From contig NW_002060946.1 of the NCBI RefSeq assembly GCF_000150275.1, forward strand, positions 7,297,855 to 7,361,854: 64,000 nt of DNA, given 5' to 3'. This DNA is from Trichoplax adhaerens (Eukaryota > Animalia > Placozoa). Under the pieces are notes generated by a model. That model saw nothing but the letters and a program-made list of their open reading frames with translations, made no database searches and was not told the DNA's origin. This document shows positions 21,864-61,052 of this stretch, piece by piece (position 1 is the stretch's first letter; each line of letters begins with the position of its first letter). A program made the position numbers and the translations under genes.

Positions 21864-22809
21864 CTAACGACTTAAATTTTTAGTCTAAAAACTATAAAAT
21901 TGGATATTCATCAGTTTAATCTTTGCTAATACTTACTTTGATTGCAGCAGGGCCATAAACATGTTTCGTAAGCATATAGATAAAACAACTTCCTGTTATA
22001 AACTGAATTACTCCAATGATAGCCGAAACAACATTGAACCACAGAGTTGATTCTCGGACTTCAGAATTTTTAAGATTCAAGTTTGATGATAGATTAATAC
22101 CAAGTTGGATAGATGATGTGATCAACGTAATAAGGGAGAAAAAGTAGAAGCAGTGTAGCTAAGGTTTACAATATAAACGGAATAAGAGAATTCGAAAATG
22201 TAAGAGCTATGCAATTACTTAATTAAATGTTTTAACGTAATGCAGTATAGTAAAAGTAATTTATACAAAGTAATATCACTACATGAGATTGAATACTACT
22301 ACAACAACGATAATTCAGTCATTGGACTGAAATCTTACCAAATGGGGCTTGGTTTCATTTTTTTGACTAATAATAGAATAATATCCGCTTGGAATATACT
22401 ATAAGAGACAGCGCCCGGAATTAAATAAAGGAAAATATCCTGTAAGATGAATCTACTTTAAATTTATCATTTACATAAGCCTCATAATTTTAACATTTGA
22501 ATTATCCCTGCTACCGGTATCCTGTTATGATTACTTGGTAGCACTTACCAAGATCGCTCCCCAAACATTAACGGCAATAGCCATTGCGGGATTGTATTTA
22601 TGATTAGAATCCACTAGGCCGAAAATACCAATTACAAAGCTTGATATACTAACTAATATACAGTTATAGCCAAGATTCCGTGATGGAAGATGAACACTCT
22701 GTGGTAATGAGTAGATGGAATCTGAAGAGCGATCAGTCTCAGTAGTAACGTCTTCCATGGCAGAAGTGTCTTCTGTAGTCGTCTCTTCACAAGTAAAGTC
22801 GATGGACAT
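21864..22809 (-). CDS. CD20/MS4A-like four-TM protein, copy A (divergent; acidic Thr-rich N-terminus; 3' end uncertain)
   Basis: Exons 22809-22549 (..GIFGL..AVNVWGAIL), 22398-22339 (60 nt, YIPSGYYSIISQKNETKPHL), 22158-21937 (LHCFYFFS..LTKHVYGPAAIK). The last exon is ambiguous: it starts at 21884 (TKNLSR*) or at ~21863 (PRHF..EKV*). Confidence 0.75.
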
Positions 22810-25134
22810 GGCCAATTATAATGTATAACAATTCCTAGTCTCTAATAAAAATGTAACAGAAATTAAACTGTTCAACTATTTTAATATGACAGAAAGTATG
22901 CAGCAAGAAATTCCGATCCATTAGCAGTGATATTAGGTGATACTTCTTTAAAATTGGGGCATTACCGTTAATTCAGGGATGATCTAAGGCGCTGAAAATG
23001 AATTAATCAATTATTATGTCAACTATGGACGTAATAAAATTTTGCAAATCTAATATTTGTGCAGAAAATACAAAATAGTTTTTACAATGCATCAAAATAA
23101 TGTTAGTACGTTAAGCGAACATTAATAGAACATCAAGCGAACATCAATAGAACATCAAGCGAAATCATATCATGTGTAGAGCATAATCACACATACCAAG
23201 ACAGCATCTGCTATGATAATCTGATAGTTTCATAGTATACATATTTCGCAGCGTTTAATCATTTATAAAGTCATCGATCATGTTCAATGAACTCTACAAA
23301 TTTCAATTCTGGTATTTTACTATTAGCAGAGATATTAGATGCACGAATCGTAATTTAGTACCAGGTTGAATTATTAATTCGTAACTAGATTCTTAATTAA
23401 AAATTTTTGTTACCGAGGCATCGGCAAGGAGTTCAAAAAATTAGTTGAGCCATATCTCATTATAACTTTGTCAATCACAAGTTTTTCCTATAGTCTGCCA
23501 TTGGTAAAATTAAAATAAAACTGTATCACACGGGTATACTTAATTACTGTTACAGTGAGTCATTATAAATTGTAGCTGCGCATTATTGCCAGGCTTGTTA
23601 AATTTTTTGAGTTATTTAAACAAATGTCATGATATTCCATATCTAATAATAGCATTCCATTTAAATTTGATCGTTAAACTCAAATCAATTTCGATTGTTT
23701 CCTACGGTGATTTTCAAAATAATTTATTGTGAACGAAAATGTCATACTTTACAGTTTGGCCGATTGAAGGATTAGAAAACTAGTAAGATTTGTTTCTGAA
23801 TTTGTTCATATTATAAAGCTTACAAAAAGAAACGAGTGCCATCCATTATCTACAACTATTATTAACTTCAATGCACGCGTAGATCGGAATCGTCTAATTG
23901 CAAACTTTGATGAAATACCTTACTTTTAATTCATACCGTTTTATCGCATTAAATGCGAGTTGCTGAAGTAAGCGGGATTTACTGTTTAAATTGATTACGA
24001 AAGAACTGATGCAAATTACCTTTCTGCAATTAGTTTCTGTAGTCATAGTTCTATAAAAATAAGTCATATAAAGTAAATGAATCCATACAATTAATGATAT
24101 ACAGGAATCACGCTGGAATCACAGATTTCATCGACATCGTAGAGAATTTGATCAGTGACTGTATCACCTATCGACTGCATTATTTGCATATTATTTATAG
24201 TAGAATATGTCTATATTGAGGTAATGATTCCAAGAAACGAATATTTGCAGTGAATTTACTTATAGAGAATCACTAACATAGCACAGTGAAATATTTTCAA
24301 AGTGTGAATATTCTCACCTTTAAAATAAGACAATAATTTTACCCTACTAGTCTACTATATTTTATATCGTGCAATTTGTAGAGATTTGAATTCACAGTAA
24401 AGATAGTAAATTAAAGGCGTATTGATAGGAGTATCCGTCAGCAAACCAGTTATGCAATATTTTATCTACTTAATCCCATTTTCAGCTTTTTTATCGCTAA
24501 ATATTTTAGAATTTTTCGCCCAGTTACCTTTTATATTGTACACATTAAAGAAACGGTTTTGATTTAAATAGTGATTTAATTTTGACAAAGTATTTCTCCT
24601 ATATGAAGACTTCCATAAAATTTATATCTATTTTATGGGATTAGTTTAGTGTACTCGCAACTTTAAGAACAATGTCGTAGTTAATATCCCTAAATACCAT
24701 TCCCATCGACTCTATTCTGATAATGAATTGAATTTTGATTCAATTTACTTCTAATTCAAACAATTTTATATCGACAGGTATTTGGTTTTAAAATCATTTT
24801 TAAAATTTACCATTACTTCGGTTATTTTAAATCATATTATACAACTATTGAAATTAAGTTTAAATGACTTACTTAAATGTATTATAGCGAAACAAATTAT
24901 GAGCTACTGTAGATCCAATCCTTAATTGCAAATAAGGAATTAAAATGTTTTACGAATACAACTGTTAATGGAATCTTTTGAAGCATATAAATATACGTAA
25001 GGTAAAATATCAAATAGGTAAGCTTAGGAGAGAATTTTTTCGAGGAATAATTGTTGCTGTAAACAGTTAATCAACTATATGATTGGTATCTAGTTGAAAA
25101 ATCAAGCCAATTCGTTTTAAATGCGATTTTATTA

Positions 25135-26765: not shown

Positions 26766-29370
26766 TTAATATCTTGGTGGCTGGTCAAATGGTACCTTCT
26801 CACTTGTCATAGTTGTTGATTGAGGATTCATAATTGCGGTAGATGGCATAGTAGTTCCTCCTGGATAAATGACAGGACTACCAACTTGCGTTTGCTGAAT
26901 AGGATTAGCTGGTATTTGTTGTGAGGCTACGTAAGGCATCCCTAAATTAACAGTTAATTTAGTATTTAGAAGTACTATGCAAATAATTATGGGCTTTGAA
27001 TATCAGCCTTAATTGAATTTAATTCTAGTTTCAACTAAACGGCAGGATTATGGAGAACCTTTAAAGGCTAGCTGGCTGCCAATAACTAATAACATTGTGC
27101 TAGGCAACGATAGAGAATCTAAGCTTAAGAATTAAAAATTACCATACGAGTAAACTAGAACAGTTCGCTTCTAAGATTTAAGTATTAAGTTAATATAGAA
27201 ATCGTAAAGTATTTGGTTTTATTTCTACTACTATACAATCGTATGAACTTATATTTATACATATTGAAAGGTAATCATAAAATTCAATTTAATGATCTAA
27301 TACCTGCAGGTTGGACTGGATCTGAAGTGAAATTGGTATAAACTCTGCCTGGAACGGTAGCACCCTGTATAGGGGAATCAACGCGATTTAGAATTAGAAT
27401 CTATGTTGCAATAATCTTAGTATGCGAGTAAAGCGAGTAATTAAAGGCGAGTAGGAAATATTAAGTAACTGCTGGTTTAAAGCTTTTAGCAAGTAATTTA
27501 CGGGCAAATAAGCTAAAAGTAATCGATAATCTGAATTATCCTAATTGATTGTCGTACTTTTAATAATAACTTACCGGATTGACGCAATAAATGTACTTTG
27601 AGAGGATAACAATGAAAGCCAATGTAAGGGAGAAACCAGAGATAGACAAGCAAGTGGAAATGATTCCTGATGGAATAAATACGTAGTAGCTATATACTAA
27701 GCTTGCAACGGATATACCAAAGTGAGGTAGGGAGAAGATAAAGGCAATGATGGAGAATGCGTAGAAAGAGTGTAACTGTTGATAAAGAAATATATAAGGT
27801 ACAGCATACTAAATAAATATTAAGACAAAATTTTTCCGGAAAAGGAATAACAGCGAAATAAAAGGGAAATACATCTAAATATATATCATAGTCTATCAAG
27901 AAATATAGTTTTAGAGAACATTTCACTTACCAAGCTAACATTGGTTGGAACTTGGTGATGTGCAATAGCTAAAGAACCAGCGATTGTGTACTAGATGTAA
28001 TCAATTCATTTCGGCGTTATAACATTGAATTATAAGATTTCATATAATGTAGAATGATTATTTTCGATTATTGCATTTTTTAGCAAATCTCTACAGGTTA
28101 ATAATTTCAGTTAGTACTCGCAAGAAGATTCAGGAACAATGTGATTTTATGAAGAGTGAAAGATTGGATGTAGATAGTAATGCAGGAAGGTAGCAGACTT
28201 TGAAAATTCGCTTCGAAATACAGCAATATCGATTTTAATCAGTATCTTTAGGCATATTAGGTGTGCTACTGTGTATTTGCTAGCGCTCATAATTAAATCA
28301 AGTGTGACATTAAGTTTATAGCACTTAAGGTAGATGTGAAAGATTCTGTTATAAAAGATTCCTTTACCTTCAATAATTAATATACGAATCGGGGTATCGT
28401 ATCTAGGCGTGAGTTTAAAATATCGCCAGTGATCGGTTTAGTTAATCTCAGAATTCTATTAATCGAATGTAGAGCAGTATTGTACAGTATATTTATCGTG
28501 CTATGAGTAAAGTTGTATAATATACCCTTCGTATGACAAGGTAAAGTGCTAGTTATAATCAAGAGACAATAGAATAGTAACGCATTGCCGATAGTTTTTC
28601 TATCAAACTGATGAGATTGGGCTCTCAGCTATGTTTACGAGAAACGAATGTTGTAACACCTGCGGAAACGGAGTCTGTCCTAGTTATATAGCTTTTATTT
28701 GCTATGCCATTACACGATACTAACTCCAATTCTGTAAGATCATTAATATACAAAATAGGTCTGAGTAGGATCGTATTGCTAATAGCTTTATTCTAATAAA
28801 CTGATGCCATTGGGCTATTAGCAACGTTTACGGACAACAATGAAATAACATCTACGAAAAGGGAGTCTATTCTAGCCAAATGGCTAGTATTTCACGTCTC
28901 ACTATGCGTAATTATTCTCTCTAACTCTGTAAGGTTACAGATATCTAAAATAGGTCTAAGTAGTATCGTATGTGAATTAATTGTGAAAATTATTTTCTGA
29001 AATTACTGGCTGTGACGATTACAAACGAAAAATAGTCATTTAGGGTAATTCAAATATTGATCGCTGGTCTACAACTTATGGATAAACTTACAATCAGTCC
29101 AACCCAAATATTCGCTCCAATTAAGGTAACAAAGCTACGACTGAATATAAAGCTGATACCTCCAAAGATGATAGAAATGATACCTAAAATCAGTAAAGCA
29201 ATTGCTAAGCCAAATGCTGACCGGCGAACATGCGGTGGTATAGTCATTGCTTGCGTAACATAGTGTTGATCAATTTGGGAATAGACAGAGGTAACAGGCT
29301 GTTGAATAGGTTGCTGATATTGTGGTGGAATTTGCTGTTGTAATTGAACTGGATAATTGACATTGGACAT
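26766..29370 (-). CDS. CD20/MS4A-like four-TM protein, copy B (~258 aa)
   Basis: Exons 29370-29092, 27990-27931, 27775-27575, 27364-27304, 26941-26766 (777 nt). GANIWVGLI|YTIAGSLAIA..|LHSFYAFSII..FSLPH..IVILSKYIYC; ends DQPPRY*. Confidence 0.88.
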
Positions 29371-31702: not shown

Positions 31703-34375
31703 TTACGAACTAGTAGTACTATACACAGGAGGCTCGGTAAATAGATGCTTTTCCATTGGGTTTGTAGTGTTGGAAATCTGGGCATTCATGATTACTGTAG
31801 ATGGCATAGAGCTTCCTGGATTGTAGGCCATTTGAGTATCGAATGCTGGTTGTGGATTAGCACTTATTGGTGACTGCTGCATAGCAACATTAGTCTGATA
31901 CATTACCACTGTATTAGAAAATTTTATAAAAATTTGATTAATAGAACATTTTTAACTAAAATAAAATAATACTTTATCTTTATTATAGTAAGATAAAATT
32001 ACATGCAGTATGAAATAGCTATAAAGTAACGTTTTACGATTAATTGAAAAGAATCACTTCATATTTGGATATTGATAAAATATTAGAATAAGTGATTAAT
32101 GATAATGTATAGTTCTTCTAGCTTAGAACAGTATGCCAATGTTTTAACTAGAGCAAGATCTATACCTTAAATTACCAAGAAAAGTAAAATTTAAATTACT
32201 AATAATGATACGTTTATTAGTAATTGTCTTACTGTTCGGCTGGTTAACGTTTACGGAGGCGACTTGACTTTGATTAAAATATCCCTAAAGCAGGTATAAA
32301 TGTGCCTTAATATTACGACTATAACACAATTAATAGCACTTGAAATTAATTAATAGCTTAACGTAGGAGATACAAGGAGGTTTTAATTTCTTTTAAGTAA
32401 CATTAATGTAGTATATCATGGCATTTTACTAGATACTGATTTCAAAAGTGTTTGATATTTTATCACTGCATGTATCGTTGACTTATATTTCTGAACAGGC
32501 GGATTACTTCAGTTTTACAGGCTAGATAACTAGAATATGAGACATTTGATTTTTGCTGCTATTGCTATAGATTACTACTTATATTCGGTGCTGTCGCTAT
32601 AATGTCGTTATAGCGTAAGCAATTCGTTATGATTAATATACTAACATGTTGTCCGCAGTAAAGGTGTAGAGAAAGGATAGTAACATATGCCGTTGAAAGA
32701 GAAAATCCAAGTAAAGCAAAGATGATTGATATCGAACCACTTATTACTGCATAAATTGATACAGCAAGAATTCCAATGATCAGGTGTGGTATTGAGAAGA
32801 TTAATGCAATTATACCAAATGAATAGAATGCATGTATCTATTGACAGTTGAGAAAATAAAGTATAAATATTAGATGAGAGACTAAGAAATAACTGATAAA
32901 AATTCAATCTTTGTTAGCTCACCAATGAAGGATTTATTTGATTATGATATTGGGCAGTGCCAAGCGATCCGGCTATTACGTACTGAAGTGTTCAATTTAC
33001 AACGGAAAGGGAAGAATTAATAAAAAAATACTATATCATGATCAATTGCTGCGGTTTTACCATTATATATTTACACACTATCGGAATCGAAAAATTTTAC
33101 TCTTGCTAATAAGCCTGATCAATCTAGTTGAGATATCACTCGCCTACCGCTTGTCAAAGATAATATTTATAGAAGAGTAATATGCAGTAAAAGTTTTACG
33201 TTATGTCTCGCCTAAATCTGTAATATTACATAGAATTAGCTCCATAACACCAGTATCATTAATGAGTGGAGAGTAAGCGAAAGAGCTCAGCTTTTATTGT
33301 CAGCTATTGATATCTATGGATATGTTTTTAACCCTTGATTTTAAGACATATCAGGAAACATCGGTTTCAGAACAAGATTGAACATTCTGATGAATATGTA
33401 TTACCCCCAAAATTCTCTATTTATAGACGAAATTACATATTTACAGAGTGAGTGTTTGATTTCAAATAACCATGCAATGATTGTGATCAAATATAGTTAG
33501 ACCTTTCCTACATAACGGCTGATATATTCAATGATACGTCATTATCAAGTTTGACTATAAGACTATGAGTTTTAAAAATTGATTTCATAATTAATAATAA
33601 TTCCATGCGTAGCATTATTTTGGCCTTAACTGAATAATTTCTGGTTTAGTTGACCGCTTTTCTTTTACAATTATGATTTCGTAATTTCTTTTTAGAGTGT
33701 ATTTATTCAATAAAAGAAATGTGTTACGGTAACTTTTCTTGATGATACAATAGGTAACGTACTGAATATGCGAGTGCTTCTTACAGCGGTTCTAAACTCT
33801 GTTAAAATAGTCGGAATTTATTAATGGTAGGAGTTTTTCGAAGTTGATAAAGATACTATAAGTAATTTATTGATCCTGATATCCTGACTCTAGCCTTTAA
33901 GACTAGCTTTATGGTTACTTATTACTGTAGAAGTATTTATTGTATATGCATTTTTATAAATATGATAGCGTAAAAACTTTAATGACTCGAATTTGTGATC
34001 GATATTACCGAATGGTATAAAAGTTAAGATCTAGTTTCTGAACGCTATTTATATCTTCCATTTCTTAGTAACGTCCAATCTTAAAGAAAATATAACGACA
34101 TTGTAACTTACTATTAATCCTGCCCAGATGTTAACACCAGTAACAATAGCAATACCATACCGTAGAACTTCAAAGCAAATTCCACCAAAGATGATACAGA
34201 TCAAGCCAAGAACAAGTAATATAAGAGACAAGGAGTATACTGATTGGCGTAGTTTTACTGGCACCGATAATAGCGGTATTGGTTGTCGAATATATTGAGG
34301 ATACAGCTGTACGCCTTGTTGTTGAATTTGAATTGGAACTGGTTGAGATTGCTGTTGGAAAGTGATCGTTGCCAT
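31703..34375 (-). CDS. CD20/MS4A-like four-TM protein, copy C (~257 aa)
   Basis: Exons 34375-34112, 32982-32923, 32837-32646, 32284-32233, 31908-31703 (774 nt). GVNIWAGLI|YVIAGSLG..|IHAFYSF..FSIPH..ILSLHLYC; tail EPPVYSTTSS*. Confidence 0.88.
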
Positions 34376-35390: not shown

Positions 35391-38300
35391 TTAGTTAAAA
35401 TGGTTAGAATCGATTGTATTGTTATAATCCGGAGGTGCTTCCGTTAGAGATCTTGTCGCTATATTCATTGATTGAGGATGTGCTGTTGTAGGAGTCAGTA
35501 TTATTCTTCCTGATGGATATGCCATTGGAATTTCAGAGAGAAGTTGAGAATTAGGGTTAATAGATTGTTGTTGCAAAGGAACTGTACGTTGATACGTTAC
35601 AGCTATTTTGTTTAAGAAGACGTAATGGAGTTAAAATAACTATTTCATACTGATATCATTATTATATATCGTCGTTAAACTATAGTAGAATCGGGAAAGA
35701 ATAGCATAAATTTAAGTTTATAAGCTATTAGTCTAGTATATATAATTGCTGTATGCATAGCCCTTAAGGTAAATCTTTTCCAATCATTTGCTAAATAACA
35801 GTAAGATTAGTTAAATTTTGAACACATGTGAATATCATCTAATGCACTTAGAGGTTCAATTTTGGAGTGCGATCAAAGTTTCTTATGGTCACTCAAACGG
35901 CATTTCTAGCCTTGATTAATGATAAGTAGCGATCAACTTACCCTCTGGTTGAGCCATGGTTAAAGTGTTATATGGATTTTGAATAAGTGCTCTCTATTTA
36001 TAACGCAGAGTCATAAAATGTTTTAAAATTTTACCAGTTGAAGCAATGAAATAAATTATGCGTATTAATTTATGAAATAAACTAGGTATTAAATATGCCG
36101 TATGATGCAAACTGTGCTCCCTATTTACAACACAGAGTCATGAAATAATTTTAAAATTTTACCGGTTCGTAGCAATTTATGAAATAAATTGGGTATTAAA
36201 TATGCCGTCTGATGCAAAGTCTTAACTTAACTTAACTATCATATTTTATGCTTATATAGTCATCACGTAGTACATGGTGAATTAATTCATGATATACGGT
36301 ACTTTCCTATCATAAGTTTGTGAAGAATATTCTATTAAATAATTTTACCAGTCATCATATAAAAAAGAAAGGAAAGATGGTAAAAAAAATTACGTCTACA
36401 TGTATAGAGCAAATAAATCTACGACGACTTACATTTTGTGAACAATAGACGTTGTGAGATAGAATAATGAGTAACGCCAGCGATAGCGAAAGTCCAATGA
36501 GAGATAAAGGGAGTGAAATCGAAGCTGATATTATTGCTCCGTAGATGAAACTTGCAATCGATAAAGCCAGATGTGGTAACGAAAATATAAATGTAATAAT
36601 ACTGAAGGCATAAAAGGCATTTATCTGTGAAGAATTGAGAAGAAAAATAACTGATTTTGAGGAATTAAGTAAAGACGGATATCACACAGTTTTATTAAAA
36701 GTTCTTAGTGTGGTCGCACATTGAACTTACCGTGGAAGGATTACTTGGATTTTGATTTTGGGTGATACCAAGGGCACCGCATATTAAGTACTAAAATTTA
36801 GGAATAACCATTTGCATTCAGTTTTAGTATAAGTAATCCAGATTATCCCAACACTTAACTACATAGTGAAATTTGAAATAACAATTTCAAATATTATGAT
36901 CAGTAATCGTTTTCGTGAGTCATTTTTTATTATGGAACACATGGTCATTTCATTTAAAGTAACGTTTACGAATATAAATGAATATCATGCACTCTATGCT
37001 GCACATATGCAATGTTTGACCTAACTGAAGTAGGTGTAGACTATTTGGCTTCAATTCGAAAGTATTTCAAGGTATGATTCACTAACGTTTTAAATTAAAC
37101 AATCGATCAAGTGCTGGCTGCATAGATATCGCGCTATTTACTAAATATTATTAAATTTGGAGTCATGAGTACTCTAAAGGCACCTTAGACTTTTTTGTAA
37201 TGGTACTAGATTTAAACGCATGTACAAATTTTTAAAAAGGTACGGTACTAATTCAAGAATTATTAGGTCGCAGAAAGTCGAATAAGACGTCATGAGCATT
37301 CCATATTTATGCTTGTCGACTGCTGTATCGATAATTGTAATCTGGGCTATGTCAACACTTTCAAAGCAATTTTATTCGTTTTATTTATTACAAATTTAGC
37401 TTTTACAATAGTGTAGGGTACTGTGTATGATCGATATCCAAGTGAGCTGCAACGATGATTTTGTGCTGTATGGCATGCGATTTAAGAGATAGGGCATAGT
37501 AGAATGAACAAAGAAATGATAAGCTCCGTTATTTTGACTGAGCCATACTTCTCGTCTCCAATAATTTCTAGGGGAAGTATTGAGCTTTTATTATTACCAA
37601 TATCGATTTGTGATACTTATGCATCAAATTGAAATAATTTTATCATAAAATTTACTGTTGCTGTTACCCTAGATTTCTTTTCTGTAAGTCATTATATATT
37701 CGTAGATATGTTTGTAAAAAATTAAAATACTTTGAGTTTTGACTTGAAACCGTCTGTAGAATGGAAATTTCGAGAAACCAGTACCGGTATACAGTAATTC
37801 TTTTCTACAGTATTAATTATCATGGTAAAACCATAAGCATCGAGTTACAAAATAGTACCGTAACCAGGATTATATCGACGAACAATTAATACATGGCTAC
37901 AATTAGGGACTCCTACAGATAATAAAGTTCTAAATTGCAAATTACTTGTGTGAACAGATCAGATTTTCCACTTCAAATTGAAAAAAGCATTTGAAAGATT
38001 TAGTGATACAAGCAGGTGAAGAAAGCTTAAGCTAGCAGGGATATATTAACCTTTTGTCATATATTTATTTATCTGAAGACATTAATATTGACAGTGATAG
38101 AGCAAAAATTTTATCTCTAATGTTATAATGAACGTCTACAGTAAAGTATGGTAGTGCACATACCAGTTTATTGCAGAGGGTATATTGATTGATTAACTAG
38201 TAGAACCCCTGCTCGTTATACATCGCGTACTGCATGTACCTTTATAATATTGCAGTTTGTTCAACACTACTTGAAATTTCTATCATTATGCCTAATAGTG

Positions 38301-38669
38301 ACGACAATTTAGGTAGACTATTTGTCTAAGTCCAAAACGCCAGCTCAAATGCTGGCCGCTATTAATTTACTACCATACTTACAAAAAATCCGCTCCAAAT
38401 ATTACTACCGCTGATTGTCGACGGGCCATAAGGCATGGCTCCCAGCAAATGCCGCCAAAGATCAGACAAAGAATACCGAGAGTGAGTAGAGAAATGGACA
38501 TGTAATATAAAGGTCGACGAAAGTTGGATGGCACCGTGGGAATTTGTACAACTTGCTGTTGAAGGTATTGCGGATAGAAGGGTATATGTACAACTGGCTG
38601 TTGAATTTGTGGATGACATTGAGATACAACTTGTCGTGGATGTTGCTGCTGAGAATTCACTGCTGCCAT
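35391..38669 (-). pseudogene. CD20/MS4A-like copy D; single 1-nt deletion in exon 1 (null allele, young pseudogene or sequence error)
   Basis: Exons 38669-38383 (287 nt = 3n-1), 36790-36731, 36624-36433, 35993-35942, 35602-35391. ..LIFGGIC is in one frame and GAMPYGPSTISGSNIWSGFF in another (break ~38443-38446). The other exons are intact; tail EAPPDY. Confidence 0.82.
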
Positions 38670-43900: not shown

Positions 43901-44537
43901 CAAATTTTGTTATTCAGTTCTATCCAAAGCTATTTTAGATCTTAATTATTTCATCTTCGTGATAGAAAAAGTTTACTTAAGTAGTACACTAAAGTACTAT
44001 AATCAAAAGTATCTTACTTTTAATGCTGGATCGAATTTAGCTTATTTCATCTGCTCATACCGTTTAGATTATTGATCATTCGAATAGATTTTATCGTTTC
44101 TCGATTAATCTTTATATGTAGTAGATATATATGAATATTATAGTATTCTGTAGGCATTTCAAACTATTCACAGGGTAACCTTTTTGAATATTTTTTTAAT
44201 TTAATATTCAATTTCTAGTTTACAGATTAATTAGTTTGGCACCAAGACTTTTAACAAGCTCATTCTCAACATATTAAACAAACGGGTTTATTCTTACAAA
44301 TAATCCGGCCCATATGTTCACTCCAGTGATGGAAATTAGGGGAAAGTTCGAGACAATGATAATAATTATACCAAAGATGAAACAGCACGAGCCAAGAATA
44401 GTTAATGTTACAGATATGCCAAAGGTAGGTCTCTGAAGACTTGGTGGTACAGTTATTGGCATAATTTGCTGTTGTGGTGTATACTGTGGTATACCCTGCA
44501 CTCTGGGTTGTTGCGATGTGTATGGGGTAGCTGCCAT
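40924..44537 (-). CDS. CD20/MS4A-like four-TM protein, copy E (~232 aa)
   Basis: Exons 44537-44298, 42268-42209, 42099-41908, 41502-41454, 41081-40924 (699 nt). GVNIWAGLF|YLIAGILGI..|THAFYAF..FSFPH..ILSQHIYC; ends GLPPPY*. Confidence 0.88.
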
Positions 44538-48216: not shown

Positions 48217-50054
48217 TTATTTTCTTATGTCTGGCAAAGGTTGTAGTTTATGTTTTGGTGGCTCTCCTAGCAGTGATTGCCCTTGCGGTTGCTGTTGTGG
48301 TGGCGGTTGTGGTGGCGGTTGTGGTGGCTGTTGTGGTGGCTGTTGTGGTGGCTGTTGTGGTGGCTGTGGTGCTATTTGTTGTTGCAATATTTGTTGCTGG
48401 GATATCATTTGAATGCCAGGGCTACCAACGCCCGGTGCTACTCCTGTGTTATAATAAACAACTCCAGATACAGGCATATTTATTGGTGTCATCATTACTG
48501 GTTGATGATATCCAGCAGGGTTCATGACTTGTACTAGAAAGCAAAAAACTGAATTAGCTTGAATACTATAGATATAGATAGGTTCACTACATTTATTGTC
48601 CGTAGTTCGGTTTTGTTGGACTTACATCGTGCTCTAATTCGCATATAAACGCAAATGAAATATTTATAATATATTTGCACACTAATCGGTTGTACGCGAT
48701 ATCATTGCAATATGAATTGATTATTACTATTGCAAAGAGTTTAAAGGATTAAAACGCACCATTTTGTTGTTGTGCAGGATGAACAGTTGATTCACTTGTT
48801 AAGCAACACTGAGGGAGAAAAATAAAATCATATTCGTGATAGAGGAAAATTTTGACCAATAATTGTATAGAAGAAAGATTACAATTCGAGATATACGTTT
48901 ACCGTATAAGAAATTATGATTAAATATAGTCTTGAAGTTTGTGAGAAAGCGAAGTATCAGATATGGACTACTTACATCACCATTGCAATATATTTGGTGT
49001 GATAGAATGATAACGCCAGCCAAGGATAGAGGAAGTGCACAAGCTGATAGAACGGTTGAAACGATAACATACCTTAAGCTATTGGAAAAGTAATGTATGT
49101 AGGCATATGAAATGCAACTGAACGTAAGCTGAAAGATTGCTGCCGCAAACGAAAGCAGGGTAAAAGCATAATAAGTATGCATCTGGAGAAGAAATAGTCA
49201 ATAATAGATTATTATCAAATCGAAATTTAATCCCACAGATTTTTTGCATAAAGAAAAAACTATCAATGTAATCTATGACTTCATAAACTAAATACAGTAA
49301 TGATACAGAAAAAATTAGATTTCCTAAAATGATTTGAAGGAGTAAATCATGATGAAGTAGAGAGTTTATCAATATATCTAACCTAGTGTCTGATTAAGCT
49401 GATGGCTAAGAGTTAACTAATATAGCTATACTGTAAATCTTACCAAATGAGGGTTAATGGTGATTTTGTATGTCAGAATCCCAAATGTGCCGGCCATAAC
49501 AAACTATTAGATATAACATGTAAATCTTACTTACAGATCATTTAGAAGCTATGCACTGACTGCAGTGGCAATTGCAGTAATATTGCGTCCATTTACTAGT
49601 CTACTGAATATTTCAGATTCTGAAATCATACTTCAGCCCGATATTGGTATAATTCTATTTTTTTATACTTAACGCAAGTCTGATTGAAAATGTGTATTTT
49701 AATCGCAACTTGAATCGATATCCTAGTATTATATTTATTAAATAACATTATTTTGGACTATTACTTTCATGGATTTGGCTTAAAAATTCTGTTACTTACA
49801 AAGACTCCGCTAACTATGTTTATGCCAGTACTTAGGATGAAGAAACGATAATCAACAAGTGCATAGCCAATACACCCCCAAGCTAAGGAAGTTATGCCGT
49901 AGACAAGCATAATAATACCTAAGTAAAAAGAACCCTTTTTCATTCGTTCGGGTAATTGATATATCTTGGGAGGTGATCTAGGCTGCATTTGACGTGGTAC
50001 TACTTGTTGAGGTGGTTGCTGCATATAAGTGACAACTTGTGTAGTGTTGGCCAT
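48217..50054 (-). CDS. CD20/MS4A-like four-TM protein, copy F (~295 aa, long PPQQ tail)
   Basis: Exons 50054-49800, 49503-49444, 49182-48976, 48808-48760, 48533-48217 (888 nt). GINIVSGVF|FVMAGTFGILTYKITINPHL|MHTYYAF..ILSHQIYC. Confidence 0.88.
48287..48372 (-). repeat. 12-bp coding microsatellite (PPQQ/PPPQ) in the C-terminal tail of copy F
   Basis: (tgttgtggtggc)/(ggttgtggtggc) x ~6-7; explains the spurious Cys/Gly, Val/Ala and Trp/Leu plus-strand ORFs. Confidence 0.9.
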
Positions 50055-51922: not shown

Positions 51923-53517
51923 TTAGAAGGCCTTTTCGTTTGAATTACCATCAGATTTGGAATTTATTAATGGTTCCTGTTGAGGCCATGATTGATGCAA
52001 TGGTTGAGGTATGCCAATTGGAGCAGGTTGCGGACCCGCTGGTGTATATTGAGCTACTCCATAAGGTGGTAGACTTGAAGATTGAATAAATACTTGGTTT
52101 GGCCTAAGGCTTGTATGGGTGGCTGAAGGACTTGAACTAGTATATGCATATAAATTTATTTAAATAAAAGGTAATGATTTTACTTCGTCATTATACTAGC
52201 TTATATTTTTATCAATATTAGACAGCCTTCTGATCTGATAACTGTAACTAATTTTATCGCAGTTTTTAATATCTCCATAGACTCAGCAATGTCATCTATG
52301 TGAATCTACTAGGTGTATGTAGATTAAATTAAAGTTATGACAAATAATATACTAACCATTTGTTGCTTGTGTGGGACGAGAAGACGATTCACTAGTTATG
52401 TAGCACTACGTGTAGTTGTTTGCGGTATATTCGAAACAGAAATGGTCAAGATAAATATACAAATCTAACGCTGATCATTTAAAGCTGCTATAATCAACTA
52501 AATTGAGGTGACTAATATACCCTGTACAGTTTGGAAATTATCCTCAATTTTATCGTTTCATTATTACGATATAGAGAAGCAGATATGCTAACTAGCAATT
52601 ACTGAAATCGCTAGTTTGTCTATACTGTAGCATCGAAGAACAGATGATAATCATAGACATTATGTTCTCGAATATGAGATAATATCTGACATTACAACCA
52701 TCGAAAAACTGGCGAATGTAAATTATTGATAATTATTTTGATTACATAATTACTTAAATTACGGTACTTACGTAGCCTTACAATATATATTATGAGAGAG
52801 TACGATCATTGCTGCAAAAGATGGAATAAGACCAATTGCCCCCAAAGAAACTGTTACAACAGGAAACCAGAACTAATAACCGCGGTGGGATGCAATACCG
52901 ATAATACCAAATATTACTTGCATAACAGCAGATACGATGGATAAAAATGAAAAGGCGTAATAGTTGTGCATCTGTGATAGTTTAAATGCAAGTATGAATA
53001 ATAAATTTTGCGTTGTTACTTTGGTAGTGTGCTAGTTACTGACGAAAGGATATGCTAAAGATTCATATCAAATTATCCCGGTAGGAATGACATTAGAATT
53101 AATGATATTAGCTATTCGTTTTTTAATGTTAGGTGTACTAAAAATATTTAGTTTTTTCTTACTTAATGAGGATTGATTGGAATCTTGAATGTTAGAATGC
53201 CGAATATTCCTGCTAAAAGATGCTGTAACAAACGGGATAAAAGCAAAATCTTGTCCAAACTAGTCGCATAGTAAATGTATCTTAATGGCAGTAGGGTATA
53301 TGAAGGTGTATCTATAGACCATAATGAGACCAAGGATACCGATGATCATAGTAATCGAGCCATATACAGTTAGTATTTTTCCTAGAACGTAAGATTTAAA
53401 GCGAAGCTGTTTAGGCAGTTTAAATTCCTTGCGACGTTTTGGCGGTACGTTCGTGTTAGAGACATATTGATAAGTGTTTGCTTGAGCATTTGGTCGGACA
53501 GTTGTCGCTGCTAGCAA
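51923..53517 (-). pseudogene. CD20/MS4A-like copy G, disabled recent duplicate of copy H
   Basis: Start ATG->TTG (53515-17); a ~265-bp deletion removes NLWAGLF and the exon-1 donor; exon 2 (53222-53163) ends in TAA; in-frame TAG at 52873-75; 1-nt deletions at the exon 3 end and in exon 5. Introns and flanks align with copy H. Confidence 0.92.
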
Positions 53518-55257: not shown

Positions 55258-57053
55258 TTAGAATGTAGGATTTGGCGATACTTTTACGAACTCCTTGTCA
55301 TTGGGGTAGTTGTTAGGATTAGGTTGGGTTGAAGGCTGCTGTTGTTGAGGCAAAGATTGAACCATACCAATCGTTACAGGTTGTGGCCCTGCTGGTGTAT
55401 ATTGAGCTACTTCATAAGGTGGTAAGTTTGAAGATTGAACTATTACTTGATTTTGGCCCATTGGTTGCACGGATGGCTGAAAGACTTGAACTAGAATATA
55501 AATGATTTAAATAAAAGGCGATGACTTCACTTCGTTATGACACTGGCTTACATGTATACCCATATTAGACTGTCTGTTGAGATGATAGAATTGTATTTAT
55601 GACAGATAATATACTAACCGCTTGCTGGTTGTGCGGGATGAGAAGACGATTCACCAGTTATGTAGCACTATGTGTAGTTGTTTGCAGTATATTGGAAAAA
55701 GAAATATTACAAGATAAAAATAAAAAGACTAAGGATAATCATTTAAAGTTACCATAATCATCTAAATTGAGGTGGCAAATATACACTGTATAGTTTAGAG
55801 ACTATCTTTTACTGTTGTATCGTTTCATAATTGTTATACGGAGAAGCAGATATGCTTGCTAGCAATTACTGAAATATCTAGCTTACAGTAAAGTTGAAGA
55901 ACAGATGATAATCAGAGATATTATGTTTTCGGATATGAGATAATAATATCTGACAACATAGCCATGGAAAAACTGGCGAATGTATTTAATTATCGATATT
56001 TATTTTAATTATATAATTTCTTAAATGACGGTACTCACGCAGCCCTTGCAGTATATATTATGAGAGAGTATAATCATTGCTGCAAATGATGGGATGAGAC
56101 CAATTACTCCAAGAGAAATTGTTACAATAAGATACCATATCGATCTACGAAAGTAGTCGGCTGTAAAGCCAACACCGCCAAATATTACTTGCAGGCCAGT
56201 AGATAAAATGGATAGAAGTGAAAAGGCGTAATAGTTGTGCATCTATGACAGTTAAAGATAAAGTGTAAATAATAAGTTTTGCGTTGTTACTTAGGTAATG
56301 TGATCGCTGCAGATATAAGAATATGCTAGAGATTCTTATCAAGTTATCACGGAAGGAAACGATATCAGTATTAGTAACATTAGCTGTTCGATTTTAGCTG
56401 TTAGATGTACTACTAGACATTTAGTTTTTTCTTACCAAATGAGGATTGACTGGAATCTTGAATGATAGAATGCCGAATATTCCTGCTAAAAGAGGCTGTA
56501 ACAAACGTGATAAAAGCACAATCTTGTTCAAACTAGTCGCATAGTAGATATGCAGACAATCAATAATAGTTACTAAGGAGAAAACTAAACTAGTTGTATG
56601 TAAGCTAAGTACGTTATTTAATAACAGTATTTAGCGAACTATTACGAAGTCGTATAGAATTTAATCGCATGTGAATTTTAATTTCTTAGAGGCTTTTCCG
56701 TCAATTAGCAATATCGATGATAATATCAAAACGAGAAATTTCATAATTGTAAGAGTACGAAAACGTAGTAAATAAATTACAAATTACAAATTACTTACAA
56801 ATAAGCCTGCCCAAAGATTAACAGCAGTAGCGTATATGAAGGTGTATCTATAGACCAAAATAAGACCAAGGATACCGATGATCATAGTAATAGAGCCATA
56901 TACAGTTAGTATTATTCCGAGAACGTAAGACTTATAGCGAAGCTGTTCAGGCAGTTTAAATTCCTTACGACGTTTTTGCGGTACGTTCGTGTTAGAGACA
57001 TATTGTTGAGTGTTTACTTGAACATTTGGTCGGACAGTTGTCGCTGCTAGCAT
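55258..57053 (-). CDS. CD20/MS4A-like four-TM protein, copy H (~266 aa)
   Basis: Exons 57053-56799, 56495-56436, 56242-56039, 55667-55619, 55490-55258 (801 nt). AVNLWAGLF|PLLAGIFGILSFKIPVNPHL|MHNYYAF..ILSHNIYCKGC|CY; tail LPPY. Confidence 0.9.
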
Positions 57054-58867: not shown

Positions 58868-61052
58868 CTATGACTTGGATGCTGGCAATGTCTTAATGGA
58901 GCTATCATTATTTAAAGCCTCTTCTTCTTTACTAGATGATGGCTGGTATTGTTGTTGGCCCTCTGTACCAGTATTATTATTAGCGATAGCGGGCTGTTGC
59001 ATAATGCCTGCAGTATATTGAATAGCACCATAAGTAGGCAAGCTAGGAGACTGAACGACGGCTTGATTTTGCGTAGCAGGCTGTACGGTCGGTTGTACGA
59101 CGTGAACTAGAAAAGTCAATGAATTAATGGTGAATATCTTTTGCGAATTTAACTTACGGCCGCGTTCTTACTTTATTTTGAGAACTGATCTCAAATCTTA
59201 ACTAATAAGCATCCTGTTTGCACGCGTAAAAATCTACGTTAGGTATTATTCACTATTATCTTTGCTTTGAAGGAAATTATCAATTGCTTTCTTGTCGAAA
59301 TAAACTATTTTTACCATTCATTACATTTTCATAACGAATATCAATTTTAAAATTTTGAAATATAATATACAAGTATTAGTATAAGTATAATGAAGCTAGT
59401 AAGGGTAGAATGAACCAATTTTGACTAAGTCATGAATGATGCAGGTTGTATCGTATTTATACTTTAAAATATAAAATATTAAACTACGATATGGTTACAT
59501 TAAATTTATTAATATGCAGGACTCGAACGATTATATTAATATAATAAACACTTAATTCTACGAGTTATGCTTTTAGATTATGAAAGTTGCATCTATAAAA
59601 GGGTTAGGTTACTTATTTTTAATATTGTCTACGAACCTGTTTGACCCTGTACAGGAAGATGTGAGGTAGAATCGCCGGTTATATAACACTATAAGTTCAA
59701 GTAAGATTTCAAAAATGAGGGTAATGAATTTCATTTGAATCACTATTATTCTATATTAAAGAGGAATTGCATTTATTTATATCCTTCAGGGAATCAATTA
59801 TTTAAATCATATAATCTTTCTAAATGCTTTATGTCTAAATATCAGTTGGAGAATGTGGATATTTGAGTACAGAAAGAAACATATTGAATAACTTTTAAAA
59901 TACATCAAATTGTTGGATAATGTAATTGGTAGCATTTTTGATGATCTTAATTTTTTTATATCTAATTGTAAACAATAATATTTTCTGAGACTGGTTTAAA
60001 ATCTTAAAATTTGTTAGAATAGAAGTTTCTGAAAAAATAACTACGGGAATGTATTTCTCAAGCAAGATTTGATTTAAATATTTCGAAATCATTAATGATG
60101 AAATTTGAAGTAAAATGGTTACTTACACAGCCTTTGCAATAGATGTTATGTGATAGTATGATAATGGCAGCCATTGATAGAGCTATTCCGAGTCCTGACA
60201 AAGAGAATGTGATGATAATCATCCATAAAGAATTACCGTAGTATCCTGTAATGGTAAGAATAGCGAATAGGAGCTGAATAAAGGAGGATAAAAAGGCCAA
60301 AAACGAAAAGGCATAATAATTATGCATCTGTAAAAAATATGAGGAAAGATCATTCTGAGTAACCGATGGGAGAAGATGAAAGGGCAAAAGATATGCCGTA
60401 CATAATATGTATCAAATCAAGTTAAAGTAAATTTAAGTTATGAAATTGGTTACTTTAATATAGGATTGTCTACTAAGTAGAAGCAAACGTTCTTAGTGTG
60501 TTCTTACCAAGTGAGGATTAATTGGAATCTTGTAGGTTAGGATCCCAAACACTCCAGATAGCAAATACTAAAAATGTGCATGCATAAATTGCAAAAGTTA
60601 ATTAGAGAAGCCATTTATTTGAAATTAACATGATGAGTTTCTGGTAATTAATCGAGATGCAACTTTCAATGTGACAATATTGGAATTGCATGAGGTAAAC
60701 TCTGTTATGCAATATACATGTGGTTAACAACGATCATTTGCTTGAGATTATTGGAGTAAGTACTGTATAGAAACAAGGTACATTGTCAATAGCTTCTGTA
60801 AATACTTACAAATAATCCTGTCCATAGATTTACACCGCTAGCGTATAGGATTGTGTATCTGGAGGTAAGAGCGAAACCGAGGATACTGATGATCATTGTT
60901 ACTGAGCCAAAGACGCTTAGAATGACCCCGAGGGAGTAAGATTTGTGGCGCACTTCTTCAGGCAATCTGTATACTTTAGCTGTCGGCTGCAATGCATTTG
61001 GATTACTAACATACTGGGGCGGATCAACTGGCAATTGAGTTGTTGCCTGCAT
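58868..61052 (-). CDS. CD20/MS4A-like four-TM protein, copy I (~264 aa)
   Basis: Exons 61052-60810, 60567-60508, 60327-60127, 59688-59637, 59106-58868 (795 nt). GVNLWTGLF|YLLSGVFGILTYKIPINPHL|MHNYYAF..ILSHNIYCKGC|CY; tail LPTY. Confidence 0.9.

What the first reader, a model, noticed from the sequence alone, without database searches (positions are those of the whole stretch)
21864..61052. Nine-gene tandem array of diversified CD20/MS4A-like four-TM proteins: candidate receptor repertoire in an invertebrate
Seen: nine head-to-tail minus-strand paralogs over ~39 kb, each with four hydrophobic segments and a conserved TM2 signature (G/A)xN(I/L/V)WxGxx|xxxxGxxGI. The protein sequences are highly diverged, the predicted extracellular loops differ in every copy, and there is ongoing birth and death (two disabled copies). 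Established: the WxGxx-(F/Y)xxxG TM2 motif typifies the CD20/MS4A family. Mammalian MS4A genes also form a tandem cluster acting in immune signalling (CD20, FcERI-beta) and as non-GPCR chemosensors in mouse necklace olfactory neurons. Inference: this is an independently expanded MS4A-like repertoire that could act as chemosensory or non-self receptors in a simple, possibly neuron-less animal. The ORF track fragments it, so automated annotation probably has it split or unlabelled.
Basis: partly seen in the sequence, partly recalled or inferred. Interest (0 to 1): 0.85.

Follow-up and report, generated by a model that had tools for sequence, protein, structure and literature searches.

The report
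Tandem CD20-like tetraspan genes in Trichoplax
Nine neighbouring genes of the placozoan Trichoplax adhaerens encode small four-helix membrane proteins that are distant relatives of the CD20/MS4A family; they have almost no extracellular surface and carry conserved ubiquitin-ligase docking motifs, so they look more like membrane adaptors than ligand receptors.

Summary
Nine head-to-tail minus-strand paralogues lie at 21.0-61.05 kb and share one exon plan, with phase-0 introns inside TM2 and in the TM2-TM3 loop. Seven are intact. G is a pseudogene with four lesions. D has a 1-nt frameshift, and its Trichoplax sp. H2 orthologue is intact.

The genome is Trichoplax adhaerens. Public models exist (TRIADDRAFT_56019...56024, 63917) and are named "uncharacterized".

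Four kinds of evidence place the proteins in the CD20-like superfamily:
- Pfam PF04103 is the best hit in 9 of 10 full-length members, near threshold.
- A family profile ranks FceRI-beta and CD20 as the top eight solved structures.
- AlphaFold models match sarcospan and FceRI-beta best.
- The introns match those of more canonical Trichoplax CD20-like genes.

The array belongs to a subfamily of at least 32 copies, found only in placozoan-type sequences. It contains three old lineages: A, B-E and F-I.

The chemoreceptor reading is not supported by the anatomy. Modelled loops are 1-5 residues. The long disordered cytosolic tails carry L/PPxY motifs in 7 of 8 genes (0.75 expected). I infer Nedd4-type WW-ligase docking, meaning trafficking or adaptor roles.

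No RNA reads or complex prediction could be obtained. This scan has already reported other CD20-like clusters elsewhere in this genome.

The parts
21000..22809 (-). Gene A (TRIADDRAFT_56019), the most divergent copy. It has no Q/P-rich tail.
   Evidence: Model P0024 maps to e1 22549-22809, e2 22339-22398, e3 21937-22158 and e4 21000-21161. Pfam CD20 E=1.1e-4 for the H2 orthologue P0004. It is 21-29% identical to the other copies.
26769..29370 (-). Gene B (TRIADDRAFT_56020), intact. Its tail ends in PPRY.
   Evidence: e1 29092-29370, e2 27931-27990, e3 27575-27775, e4 27302-27364, e5 26769-26939. Pfam CD20 28.2 bits against a cut-off of 27.9. AlphaFold model. The T. adhaerens model P0003 splices away the PPRY end, which the H2 model P0022 and the open frame keep.
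31706..34375 (-). Gene C, intact. Its tail holds PPVY.
   Evidence: e1 34112-34375, e2 32923-32982, e3 32646-32837, tail exon 31706-31909. The small exon 4 was not located.
35394..38669 (-). Gene D, with a 1-nt frameshift in exon 1 at about 38445. Its tail holds PPDY.
   Evidence: e1 38383-38669, e2 36731-36790, e3 36433-36624, e4 near 35940-35993, e5 35394-35603. The H2 orthologue P0006 (TrispH2_004389) is an uninterrupted 267 aa with Pfam CD20 at 27.7 bits.
40927..44537 (-). Gene E, intact. Its tail ends in PPPY.
   Evidence: e1 44298-44537, e2 42209-42268, e3 41908-42099, e4 near 41467-41502, e5 40927-41082. Its orthologue on contig L001 has the same exon plan.
48220..50054 (-). Gene F, intact. 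It has V for W in TM2, a (QPP)n tail and no PY motif.
   Evidence: e1 49800-50054, e2 49444-49503, e3 48976-49182, tail open frame 48220-48525. Exon 4 and the acceptor of the tail exon were not located. A 12-nt repeat lies at 48283-48382.
51926..53517 (-). Copy G, a pseudogene. It is a duplicate of H (77% identical).
   Evidence: e1 53278-53517 (TTG for ATG; TM2a and the donor lost), e2 53166-53222 followed by TAA, e3 52777-52971 with an in-frame TAG, tail 51926-52099. The H2 counterpart TrispH2_011075 is a degenerate 150-aa model.
55261..57053 (-). Gene H (TRIADDRAFT_56024), intact. Its tail holds LPPY.
   Evidence: Model P0002 maps exactly to e1 56799-57053, e2 56436-56495, e3 56039-56242, e4 55620-55667 and e5 55261-55491. 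AlphaFold model.
58871..61052 (-). Gene I (TRIADDRAFT_63917, named 'expressed protein'), intact. Its tail holds LPTY and its N-tail holds PPQY.
   Evidence: e1 60810-61052, e2 60508-60567, e3 60127-60327, e4 59638-59688, e5 58871-59107. The public model P0017 removes a 42-nt stretch (60193-60234) inside TM4, which is probably a mis-called intron.

Best explanation
This is a tandem array of seven working genes and two disabled copies in Trichoplax adhaerens. They encode tetraspan membrane proteins of about 235-270 residues from the CD20-like superfamily (MS4A, sarcospan, TMEM176).

Each protein is a compact four-helix bundle. By analogy with CD20, both ends are taken to be cytosolic. The external loops are very short. 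The N-tail (about 35-60 residues) and C-tail (about 80-100 residues; absent in A) are long, disordered and Q/P-rich.

The array is one of two clusters of a subfamily of at least 32 copies that was found only in placozoan-type sequences. It was built from three old lineages (A, B-E, F-I) by local duplication, with occasional gene death.

Shown: the gene structure, the paralogy, family membership at superfamily level, the predicted fold, and enrichment of L/PPxY motifs in the tails.

Inferred mechanism: like FceRI-beta and sarcospan, these proteins act as small accessory or adaptor subunits inside the membrane rather than as ligand-binding receptors. Their PY motifs dock the WW domains of Nedd4-type HECT ligases, so that the proteins, and perhaps partner proteins, are ubiquitinated and sorted through the endosomal system, as happens for LAPTM4/5.

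My confidence is about 0.85 for the family assignment and about 0.35 for the PY/Nedd4 mechanism.
For: Structure and paralogy.

Organism and gene models.

Family membership:
- PF04103 is the best Pfam hit in 9 of 10 full-length members (E 2e-6 to 0.03). Three reach the 27.9-bit cut-off: B in the window and two cluster-2 paralogues. D's H2 orthologue scores 27.7.
- PF04103 is precomputed for gene B in the public collection.
- The family profile against all PDB sequences gives FceRI-beta and CD20 as the top 8 hits (E 7e-4 to 0.04). The next hit is claudin-19 at 0.35. TM1 and the W-x-G-x-x-Y/F-x-x-x-G motif of TM2 align in register.
- The AlphaFold cores have pLDDT of about 70-94 in 10-residue blocks.
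- Foldseek gives FceRI-beta first (TM 0.69-0.70, rmsd 3.0), then CD20 and sarcospan.
- VIA-align over 48,161 chains gives sarcospan Z 16.9/15.2 and FceRI-beta Z 16.4/14.4.
- The three nearest ESM Atlas clusters carry PF04103.
- Two other, more canonical Trichoplax CD20-like genes (TM1 motif LGAIQ; exon 1 alone scores 20-22 bits to PF04103) end exon 1 at the same WxGxx|Y position. One of them has the same 20-codon exon 2.

Size and range of the subfamily: 32 exon-3 matches in the genome, 9 of them here and 20 on C1395:889-1105 kb. Only Trichoplax proteins and unnamed contigs were found in 1.84 billion representatives. A divergent organism keeps the tandem layout and the exon plan. Exon-3 tree.

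Loops: the non-helical loops are 4, 4 and 5 residues in the model of B, and 5, 4 and 1 in the model of H.

PY motifs: [PL]PxY occurs in 7 of 8 window tails against 0.75 expected from composition (0 of 5000 shuffles), and in 11 of 16 family tails against 1.4 expected. In B-E it is the only clearly conserved element of otherwise unalignable tails, and it sits at or near the C-terminus.

The partner class exists: at least three loci in this genome combine WW and HECT domains.

L/PPxY binding to Nedd4 WW domains and the sorting of LAPTM5 and LAPTM4 are described in PMC2064599, PMC3214061 and PMC2824488.
Against: - Most members score below the Pfam cut-off, and the PDB E-values are modest.
- The fold search does not separate CD20-like bundles from the transmembrane bundles of tetraspanins (uroplakin Z 15.0-15.1, PRPH2 13.9-14.2).
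- The TM1 glutamine seen in CD20, FceRI-beta and other Trichoplax CD20-like genes is absent here.
- The PY reading rests on motifs alone. F has none. A has no Q/P-rich tail and was not scanned for the motif. The E-like gene of the divergent organism ends in PPLHY, which is not a canonical PPxY.
- The motif-bearing tails of G, H and I are related, so they are not independent counts.
- Membrane orientation is inferred from CD20 and from N-x-S/T sequons in the first loop of cluster-2 paralogues. It was not measured.
Confidence: 0.6

Rival explanations
1. One reading: a diversified repertoire of surface receptors (non-GPCR chemosensors or non-self sensors). Like the mouse MS4A necklace-neuron receptors, each paralogue would bind different external ligands.
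For: The family is tandemly expanded and highly diverged (21-77% identity), with at least 32 copies in the genome. The loop between TM3 and TM4 is the most variable part of the core and carries indels. The proteins are homologous to the MS4A family. Necklace olfactory neurons express MS4A receptors that are not G-protein coupled, as summarised in PMC7776563.
Against: In the models the loops taken as external are 1-5 non-helical residues, and there is no ectodomain. Even the longest second loop, in A, adds only about 8 residues. The conserved short motifs lie in the cytosolic tails. No expression or ligand data were obtained. H1 and H2 orthologues are 94-100% identical, and the B-E duplicates are old, so there is no sign of rapid recent turnover.
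Confidence: 0.13
2. Subunits that oligomerise into an ion-conducting or ion-regulating complex of endomembranes or the plasma membrane, as has been proposed for TMEM176 and some MS4A proteins. Conserved polar residues inside the bundle would line or gate a pathway.
For: Polar positions inside predicted helices are conserved across the family: Asn in G-x-N-I/L-W of TM2, His or Gln in mid TM3 (PH(F/L) in B-E and most of cluster 2; Q in A, F-I and a minority of cluster 2), and Ser and His near the end of TM4. That CD20 forms dimers is taken from the literature, not tested here.
Against: No oligomer model could be run. The solved CD20 and FceRI-beta structures that match best are not channels as deposited (one search lists them as an antigen and a receptor subunit). 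Conserved polar residues are equally expected for helix packing or for binding a partner subunit.
Confidence: 0.12
3. Not true CD20 relatives: a placozoan-specific four-helix membrane family that resembles CD20 only through convergent transmembrane composition.
For: Zuccolo et al. 2010 (PMC2826416) judged invertebrate 'MS4A-like' matches to be short transmembrane similarities and concluded that invertebrates lack MS4A genes. Most Pfam scores here are below threshold. Four-helix bundles are common, and tetraspanin bundles score nearly as well. UniRef names one paralogue 'MARVEL domain-containing'.
Against: Four independent rankings put CD20-family members first. No other Pfam family recurs as a second hit except BCLP, which appears in 3 of 10 at E 0.011-0.93. 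The match is in register over TM1-TM3 with the same TM2 motif. Two intron positions, with their phases, are shared with Trichoplax genes that have the canonical LGAIQ TM1. MARVEL scores only E=0.97 in one member.
Confidence: 0.1

Closest known systems
FceRI-beta (MS4A2)
   Same: It is the best sequence hit of the family profile among solved structures (E 7e-4) and the best Foldseek hit (TM 0.69-0.70, rmsd 3.0). Like these proteins it is a four-helix bundle with short external loops, has the same TM2 motif W-G-x-x-F-x-x-S-G, and has cytosolic tails that carry tyrosine motifs. It works as an accessory subunit rather than a ligand binder.
   Different: Sequence identity is only 14-16%. FceRI-beta has the TM1 glutamine and an ITAM in its C-tail. 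The Trichoplax proteins lack both and carry L/PPxY motifs instead. No partner receptor is known here.
CD20 (MS4A1) and the vertebrate MS4A cluster
   Same: It shares the Pfam family PF04103, aligns in register over TM1-TM3, and its genes are arranged in a tandem cluster (PMC7271567 for 11q12).
   Different: CD20 has a long second extracellular loop, which is absent here (helices 111-141 and 147-176 in the model of B). Orthology to MS4A proper is untested. The two expansions are independent.
Sarcospan
   Same: It is the top structural match by VIA-align for both models (Z 16.9 and 15.2). It is a compact tetraspan that serves as a subunit of a larger membrane complex. I recall from Pfam that it is a member of the CD20-like family; this was not tested here.
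   Different: There was no sequence hit at E<=10 with the family profile. Sarcospan is a single-copy gene in vertebrates (from memory), not an array.
LAPTM4A/4B/LAPTM5 and NDFIP1/2 (PY-motif membrane adaptors of Nedd4 ligases)
   Same: They are small multi-spanning proteins whose cytosolic tails carry L/PPxY motifs that bind Nedd4 WW domains and direct sorting (PMC2064599, PMC3214061). This is the proposed working analogy.
   Different: There is no sequence relationship: no member hit the Mtp/LAPTM or NDFIP Pfam models. Binding to WW domains has not been shown for the Trichoplax proteins.
Other CD20-like genes of Trichoplax
   Same: Exon 1 ends at the same place inside TM2 after WxGxx. The C1409 gene has the same 20-codon second exon.
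   Different: Those genes keep the canonical LGAIQ motif in TM1 and score higher on PF04103 per exon. This subfamily has lost that motif and has gained long Q/P-rich tails with PY motifs.

Membership tests
CD20-like family (Pfam PF04103: MS4A, TMEM176, sarcospan) | Match to the family HMM at or above the curated cut-off (27.9 bits) | tested here: met
   Gene B scores 28.2 bits and two cluster-2 paralogues score 28.2 and 28.3. D's H2 orthologue scores 27.7. A, H and I score 14.6-22.7 bits but still have CD20 as their best hit. The paralogues are linked to each other at E 1e-10 to 1e-29, so membership carries over. Taken gene by gene the result is borderline.
CD20-like family (Pfam PF04103: MS4A, TMEM176, sarcospan) | TM2 motif W-x-G-x-x-[YF]-x-x-x-G aligned in register with solved members | tested here: met
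   The HMMER alignments to FceRI-beta and CD20 show it. The motif is present in 8 of 9 copies.
CD20-like family (Pfam PF04103: MS4A, TMEM176, sarcospan) | Four-helix transmembrane bundle with the fold of solved members | tested here: met
   Two AlphaFold models were made. The top matches are FceRI-beta, sarcospan and CD20. Tetraspanin bundles score within about 1-2 Z units, so this feature alone does not discriminate.
CD20-like family (Pfam PF04103: MS4A, TMEM176, sarcospan) | Intron positions shared with other members | tested here: met
   Shared with two other Trichoplax CD20-like genes. Comparison with vertebrate genes could not be made because no vertebrate genome is within reach of these tools.
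CD20-like family (Pfam PF04103: MS4A, TMEM176, sarcospan) | N- and C-termini in the cytosol | not testable with these tools
   Inferred from homology and from N-x-S/T sequons in the first loop of cluster-2 paralogues.
MS4A proper (vertebrate clade) | Phylogenetic placement inside MS4A rather than with TMEM176, sarcospan or other CD20-like lineages | not tested
   No vertebrate or other invertebrate reference sequences could be brought in by reference. The family profile hits MS4A1 and MS4A2 but not sarcospan by sequence, which is only a hint.
MS4A proper (vertebrate clade) | Conserved glutamine in TM1 (L-G-x-x-Q); that this is characteristic of the family is my recollection plus the two solved members | tested here: not met
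   CD20 has LGAVQ and FceRI-beta has LGVTQ, but the family consensus is lgitll. Other Trichoplax CD20-like genes do have LGAIQ.
MS4A proper (vertebrate clade) | Chemosensory or immune-signalling function | not testable with these tools
   No expression or ligand data. An ITAM (two YxxL/I motifs) was not seen in the tails (sequences).
Tetraspanin (PF00335) | Large second extracellular domain with a CCG motif | tested here: not met
   The second loop is 1-5 non-helical residues in the models. No tetraspanin Pfam hit appeared.
Claudin/PMP22 (PF00822, PF13903) | Match to the HMM and a large first loop with W-GLW-C-C | tested here: not met
   Only the exon-1 open frame of C hit Claudin_2, below cut-off (19.9 against 29.1 bits). 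No full-length member did. The first loop is 4-5 residues.
LAPTM (Pfam Mtp) and MARVEL (PF01284) | Match to the family HMM | tested here: not met
   No Mtp hit appeared. MARVEL scored E=0.97 in one member only.

The most novel reading that the evidence does not exclude
The family of at least 32 copies is a diversified set of membrane sensors in an animal without neurons. It would be the placozoan counterpart of the MS4A non-GPCR chemoreceptors. Ligands would be sensed within or at the edge of the bilayer by the variable helix ends. The conserved PY motifs would couple each sensor to Nedd4-type ubiquitination for signalling or down-regulation.
Probability: 0.12. Interest if true: 0.8.

Novelty: new member of a known kind. 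Interest (0 to 1): 0.42.

Why it matters
A 2010 survey (PMC2826416) concluded that invertebrates lack MS4A-like genes. This array, together with its sister cluster of about 20 copies and the more canonical CD20-like genes of the same genome, shows that the CD20-like tetraspan fold and its gene structure were already present and independently expanded in Placozoa, a non-bilaterian phylum without neurons. That gives a simple system in which to ask what the ancestral job of this poorly understood family was.

The conserved L/PPxY motifs give a concrete, cheap hypothesis to test (WW/Nedd4 docking and sorting). To my knowledge this has not been described for CD20-like proteins.

The genes themselves are already in the public annotation, and some already carry the Pfam label. 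The gain is therefore classification and a hypothesis, not a new kind of system.

Tried and rejected
I did not send that stretch to a reads tool again.
- Complex prediction. There is no verdict.
- Transcript contigs. Exact look-ups of models H and I found nothing on record.
- Expression from the literature. No paper names these gene ids. In the held part of the Najle 2023 supplement only TriadG56019 appears, in the unassigned 'grey' module. The Sebe-Pedros 2018 paper is not held. The Mayorova 2025 supplement holds nothing relevant.
- Intron positions of vertebrate MS4A genes. They were not found in the papers read. My recollection that TM2 of human MS4A2 is split between two exons is only a lead.
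- Single exons against Pfam give only E of about 0.1 for CD20. PF04103 against the six-frame genome gives three weak hits and none in the window. Exon fragmentation hides the family.
- Word-indexed protein searches found only Trichoplax proteins.
- Joining the exons. Full-length analyses used public gene models returned by the searches (P0002, P0003, P0004, P0006, P0017, P0024 and others). As a result C, E and F were analysed exon by exon only. Identities were summed per exon. The two halves of D's exon 1 were compared with an X at the break.
- Rejected readings: ITAM-type signalling tails (no paired YxxL/I), and tetraspanin, claudin, MARVEL or LAPTM membership (see the membership test).

Full report
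**What is there**

The window is G000:C1411:7297855-7361854 of a 105.6-Mb assembly. Gene B translates exactly to TRIADDRAFT_56020 of Trichoplax adhaerens. A, H and I are TRIADDRAFT_56019, 56024 and 63917.

The exons of copy I were read from the sequence. A tblastn of those exons against the whole window, motif scans and exact mapping of public models find nine copies. All are on the minus strand, between 21.0 and 61.05 kb, and there are none elsewhere in the window.

The shared exon plan is:
- Exon 1: N-tail, TM1 and the first half of TM2, ending right after (G/A)xN(I/L/V)WxGxx.
- Exon 2: 20 codons, Y/F-xxx-G-xx-G-I... ending in ...P(H/S)L.
- Exon 3: TM3 and TM4, ending in ILSxxIYC.
- A small exon 4.
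- A Q/P-rich tail exon. A differs here: its last exon is not Q/P-rich.

All junctions that I checked are AG/GT, and the e1/e2/e3 junctions are phase 0.

**The disabled copies**

G has four lesions relative to its closest paralogue H (77% identical):
- TTG in place of the start ATG.
- Loss of the end of exon 1, including the WxG half of TM2 and the splice donor.
- TAA as the last codon of exon 2.
- An in-frame TAG in exon 3.
These are shown. Its counterpart in Trichoplax sp. H2 (TrispH2_011075) is an aberrant 150-residue model that reads exon 2 out of frame. The copy was therefore probably already dead before the two lineages split.

D lacks one base at about 38445, between TM1 and TM2. Its H2 orthologue TrispH2_004389 is an uninterrupted 267-residue protein. 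The lesion is either very recent or an assembly error. Reads would decide, but I could not obtain them.

**Annotation**

The public protein accessions of A (EDV26180) to I (EDV26186) are consecutive. That fits seven models for the seven intact genes. I inferred this from the numbering; only A, B, H and I were seen directly. They are named 'uncharacterized', 'predicted' or 'expressed' protein. The public collection already records PF04103 for gene B. So the array is annotated but unnamed. It is not split.

**Which family**

Single exons give only E of about 0.1 for Pfam CD20. Instead I searched 1.84 billion representative proteins with a profile of exon 3 (A1). That search returned the public full-length models and paralogues.

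The evidence from those full-length proteins is:
- **Pfam.** PF04103 is the best family in 9 of 10, at E 2e-6 to 0.03. B and two cluster-2 paralogues reach the 27.9-bit cut-off, and D's H2 orthologue scores 27.7.
- **Solved structures by sequence.** A profile of twelve full-length members (A2) was searched against every PDB sequence. The top eight hits are all FceRI-beta (MS4A2) or CD20, at E 7e-4 to 0.04. Claudin-19 follows at 0.35. The alignment runs in register through TM1 and the TM2 motif W-G-x-x-Y/F-x-x-S/A-G, and for CD20 into TM3.
- **Predicted fold.** AlphaFold models of B and H have confident four-helix cores (pLDDT about 70-94 in 10-residue blocks) and disordered tails.
- **Fold comparison.** Foldseek ranks FceRI-beta first (TM 0.69-0.70, rmsd 3.0 over 154 columns), then CD20 and sarcospan. 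An independent all-against-48,161-chain comparison ranks sarcospan (Z 16.9 and 15.2) and FceRI-beta (Z 16.4 and 14.4) at the top. The transmembrane bundles of tetraspanins (uroplakin, PRPH2) score only 1-2 Z units lower. The fold therefore agrees with the family assignment but does not prove it.
- **Language-model features.** The three nearest ESM Atlas clusters carry PF04103, at scores of 0.84-0.87. This is a lead only.
- **Gene structure.** Two other Trichoplax genes have the canonical TM1 motif LGAIQ, and their first exons alone score 20-22 bits on PF04103. They end exon 1 at exactly the same place (APIWSGIF|gtaagt and APIWMGLL|gtaagt). One continues with a 20-codon exon, YLMAGIFAIVSRKTRNIHL.

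Together these make membership of the CD20-like superfamily about 85% likely in my judgement.

Membership of MS4A proper is untested. The TM1 glutamine of CD20 and FceRI-beta is missing here. I had no vertebrate sequences by reference for a tree.

**How large and how old**

The exon-3 profile matches 32 places in the genome: the nine here, 20 on contig C1395 between 889 and 1105 kb, and singles on C1380, C1390 and C770.

Every named hit in the 1.84-billion-protein library is from T. adhaerens or Trichoplax sp. H2. The rest are unnamed exon-sized fragments from ENA and Logan assemblies.

Two such contigs (L001 and L003, from runs SRR30664517 and SRR30664516) carry genes with the same exon plan. 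On L001 the first exon of a second gene follows in tandem. They are about 45% identical to D and B over exon 1, and up to about 88% identical to a cluster-2 gene over exon 3. This fits another placozoan lineage, which is my inference.

In an exon-3 tree of 31 sequences and 65 columns:
- B-E together with the L001 gene form one supported group (98/95), with the L001 gene next to E.
- F-I form another (97/95), nested among three cluster-2 genes.
- A is a long unplaced branch.

The array therefore holds three old lineages that grew by local duplication. The identity matrix agrees: B-E 45-50%, F-I 43-77%, A 21-29%. H1 and H2 orthologues are 94-100% identical and appear to be one-to-one. This is a lineage-specific expansion, but most of it is not recent.

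**How it probably works**

In the models the non-helical loops are 4, 4 and 5 residues in B (helices 46-76, 81-106, 111-141, 147-176) and 5, 4 and 1 residues in H. Even A's longer second loop adds only about 8 residues. There is no ectodomain to bind a ligand. In this respect the proteins resemble FceRI-beta and sarcospan, which are accessory subunits, more than CD20.

What the proteins do have is long disordered cytosolic tails. In those tails [PL]PxY occurs in 7 of 8 genes, against 0.75 expected from composition (none of 5000 shuffles reached 7). Across both clusters it occurs in 11 of 16 tails, against 1.4 expected. The motifs are:
- B: ...DQPPRY (C-terminal end)
- C: ...EPPVYSTTSS (C-terminal end)
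- D: ...APPDYNNT...
- E: ...LPPPY (C-terminal end)
- G, H, I: LP(P/T)Y
- Cluster-2 members: PPQY, PPLY, PPNY

In B-E this is the only clearly conserved element of tails that otherwise cannot be aligned. An N-terminal (P/Y/I)PQY motif is also conserved, including in the divergent contigs.

L/PPxY is the docking motif for the WW domains of Nedd4-family HECT ligases. It directs the sorting of the multi-spanning LAPTM4/5 proteins (PMC2064599, PMC3214061, PMC2824488). The Trichoplax genome has at least three loci that combine WW and HECT domains. One, with four WW matches, lies on the same scaffold at 5.476-5.480 Mb.

I therefore propose that these tetraspans are membrane adaptors or accessory subunits whose abundance and location are set by WW-ligase docking and ubiquitin-dependent sorting. 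The same may apply to proteins they associate with.

This step is inferred. I put it at about 35%. Against it:
- F has no such motif.
- A has no Q/P-rich tail and was not scanned.
- The E-like gene of the divergent organism ends in PPLHY.
- The G, H and I motifs are not independent of one another.
- The one computational binding test I tried could not be run.

**Rivals**

- The receptor reading (about 13%) keeps the attraction of a diversified tandem family related to MS4A. Its weaknesses are the minimal external surface and the lack of any expression data.
- A channel or pore reading (about 12%) rests on conserved polar residues inside the helices: Asn in TM2 and His/Gln in TM3.
- Convergence without homology (about 10%) is what Zuccolo et al. 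argued for invertebrate matches in 2010 (PMC2826416). It is hard to reconcile with the in-register profile matches and the shared introns.

**Limits**

The only hint of transcription is the source name 'expressed protein' for gene I.
- No exon-joined sequence was searched, so C, E and F were analysed exon by exon only.
- The small exon 4 of C, F and G was not located.
- Membrane orientation is inferred.

**Novelty**

These are new, diverged members of a known family in a phylum where the family has not been discussed in the papers I could search. A testable new feature is the PY-motif tails.

This scan has already reported other CD20-like clusters and fused triple-CD20 genes on other pieces of this same genome. 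The presence of the family in Trichoplax is therefore not a new result of this window.

Noticed in passing
window 1-16300, minus strand: Three tandem phospholipid scramblase genes. Their first exons, holding the proline-rich N-termini and the CPPGLEYL motif, are at 2896-3324, 10621-10914 and 15939-16265. Core exons are at 7589-7936 and 14720-14995, with Pfam Scramblase E of 2e-18 and 5e-18. This is a second tandem gene family next to the tetraspan array.
   Followed up: partly
window 9543-10183, 11297-12981, 19763-20718: Three satellite-like tandem arrays with units of 159 bp, 115/140/255 bp and 178 bp, at 82-97% matches. They lie between and downstream of the genes. The last one sits just beyond the 3' end of gene A.
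   Followed up: no
window 26586-26939 (gene B tail): The T. adhaerens model P0003 splices out of the tail exon at 26796 to a 9-codon exon at 26586-26612 and so loses the terminal ...DQPPRY. The open frame and the H2 model P0022 keep it. This is either alternative splicing or a model error. It matters for the PY-motif reading.
   Followed up: partly
window 60193-60234 (gene I exon 3): The public model TRIADDRAFT_63917 removes 42 nt inside TM4, as if it were an intron. All paralogues read through this position. It is probably a mis-called intron.
   Followed up: partly
window 57189-57311: The H2 model of gene H (TrispH2_011076, 316 aa) adds about 50 N-terminal residues from sequence upstream of the ATG used in T. 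adhaerens. A similar stretch lies upstream of pseudogene G (53708-53776). It may be a shared 5' exon or UTR of the H/G duplication unit.
   Followed up: no
window 48283-48382 (gene F tail): A 12-nt repeat encodes (QPP)n in the C-tail of F. F is the only intact Q/P-tailed copy without a PY motif.
   Followed up: no
G000:C1395:889000-1105000: The sister cluster of the same subfamily has 20 exon-3 matches over about 215 kb on both strands. It includes two copies with identical exon 3 at 915 and 917 kb, which the public model TRIADDRAFT_61155 fuses into one 450-aa protein. Several members have N-x-S/T sequons in a longer first loop.
   Followed up: partly
window 19037-19365: Another first-stage note on this window calls this stretch an intronless bacterial-type cupin. 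The given range and plus strand contain 8 stop codons in frame 1. I did not look further.
   Followed up: no
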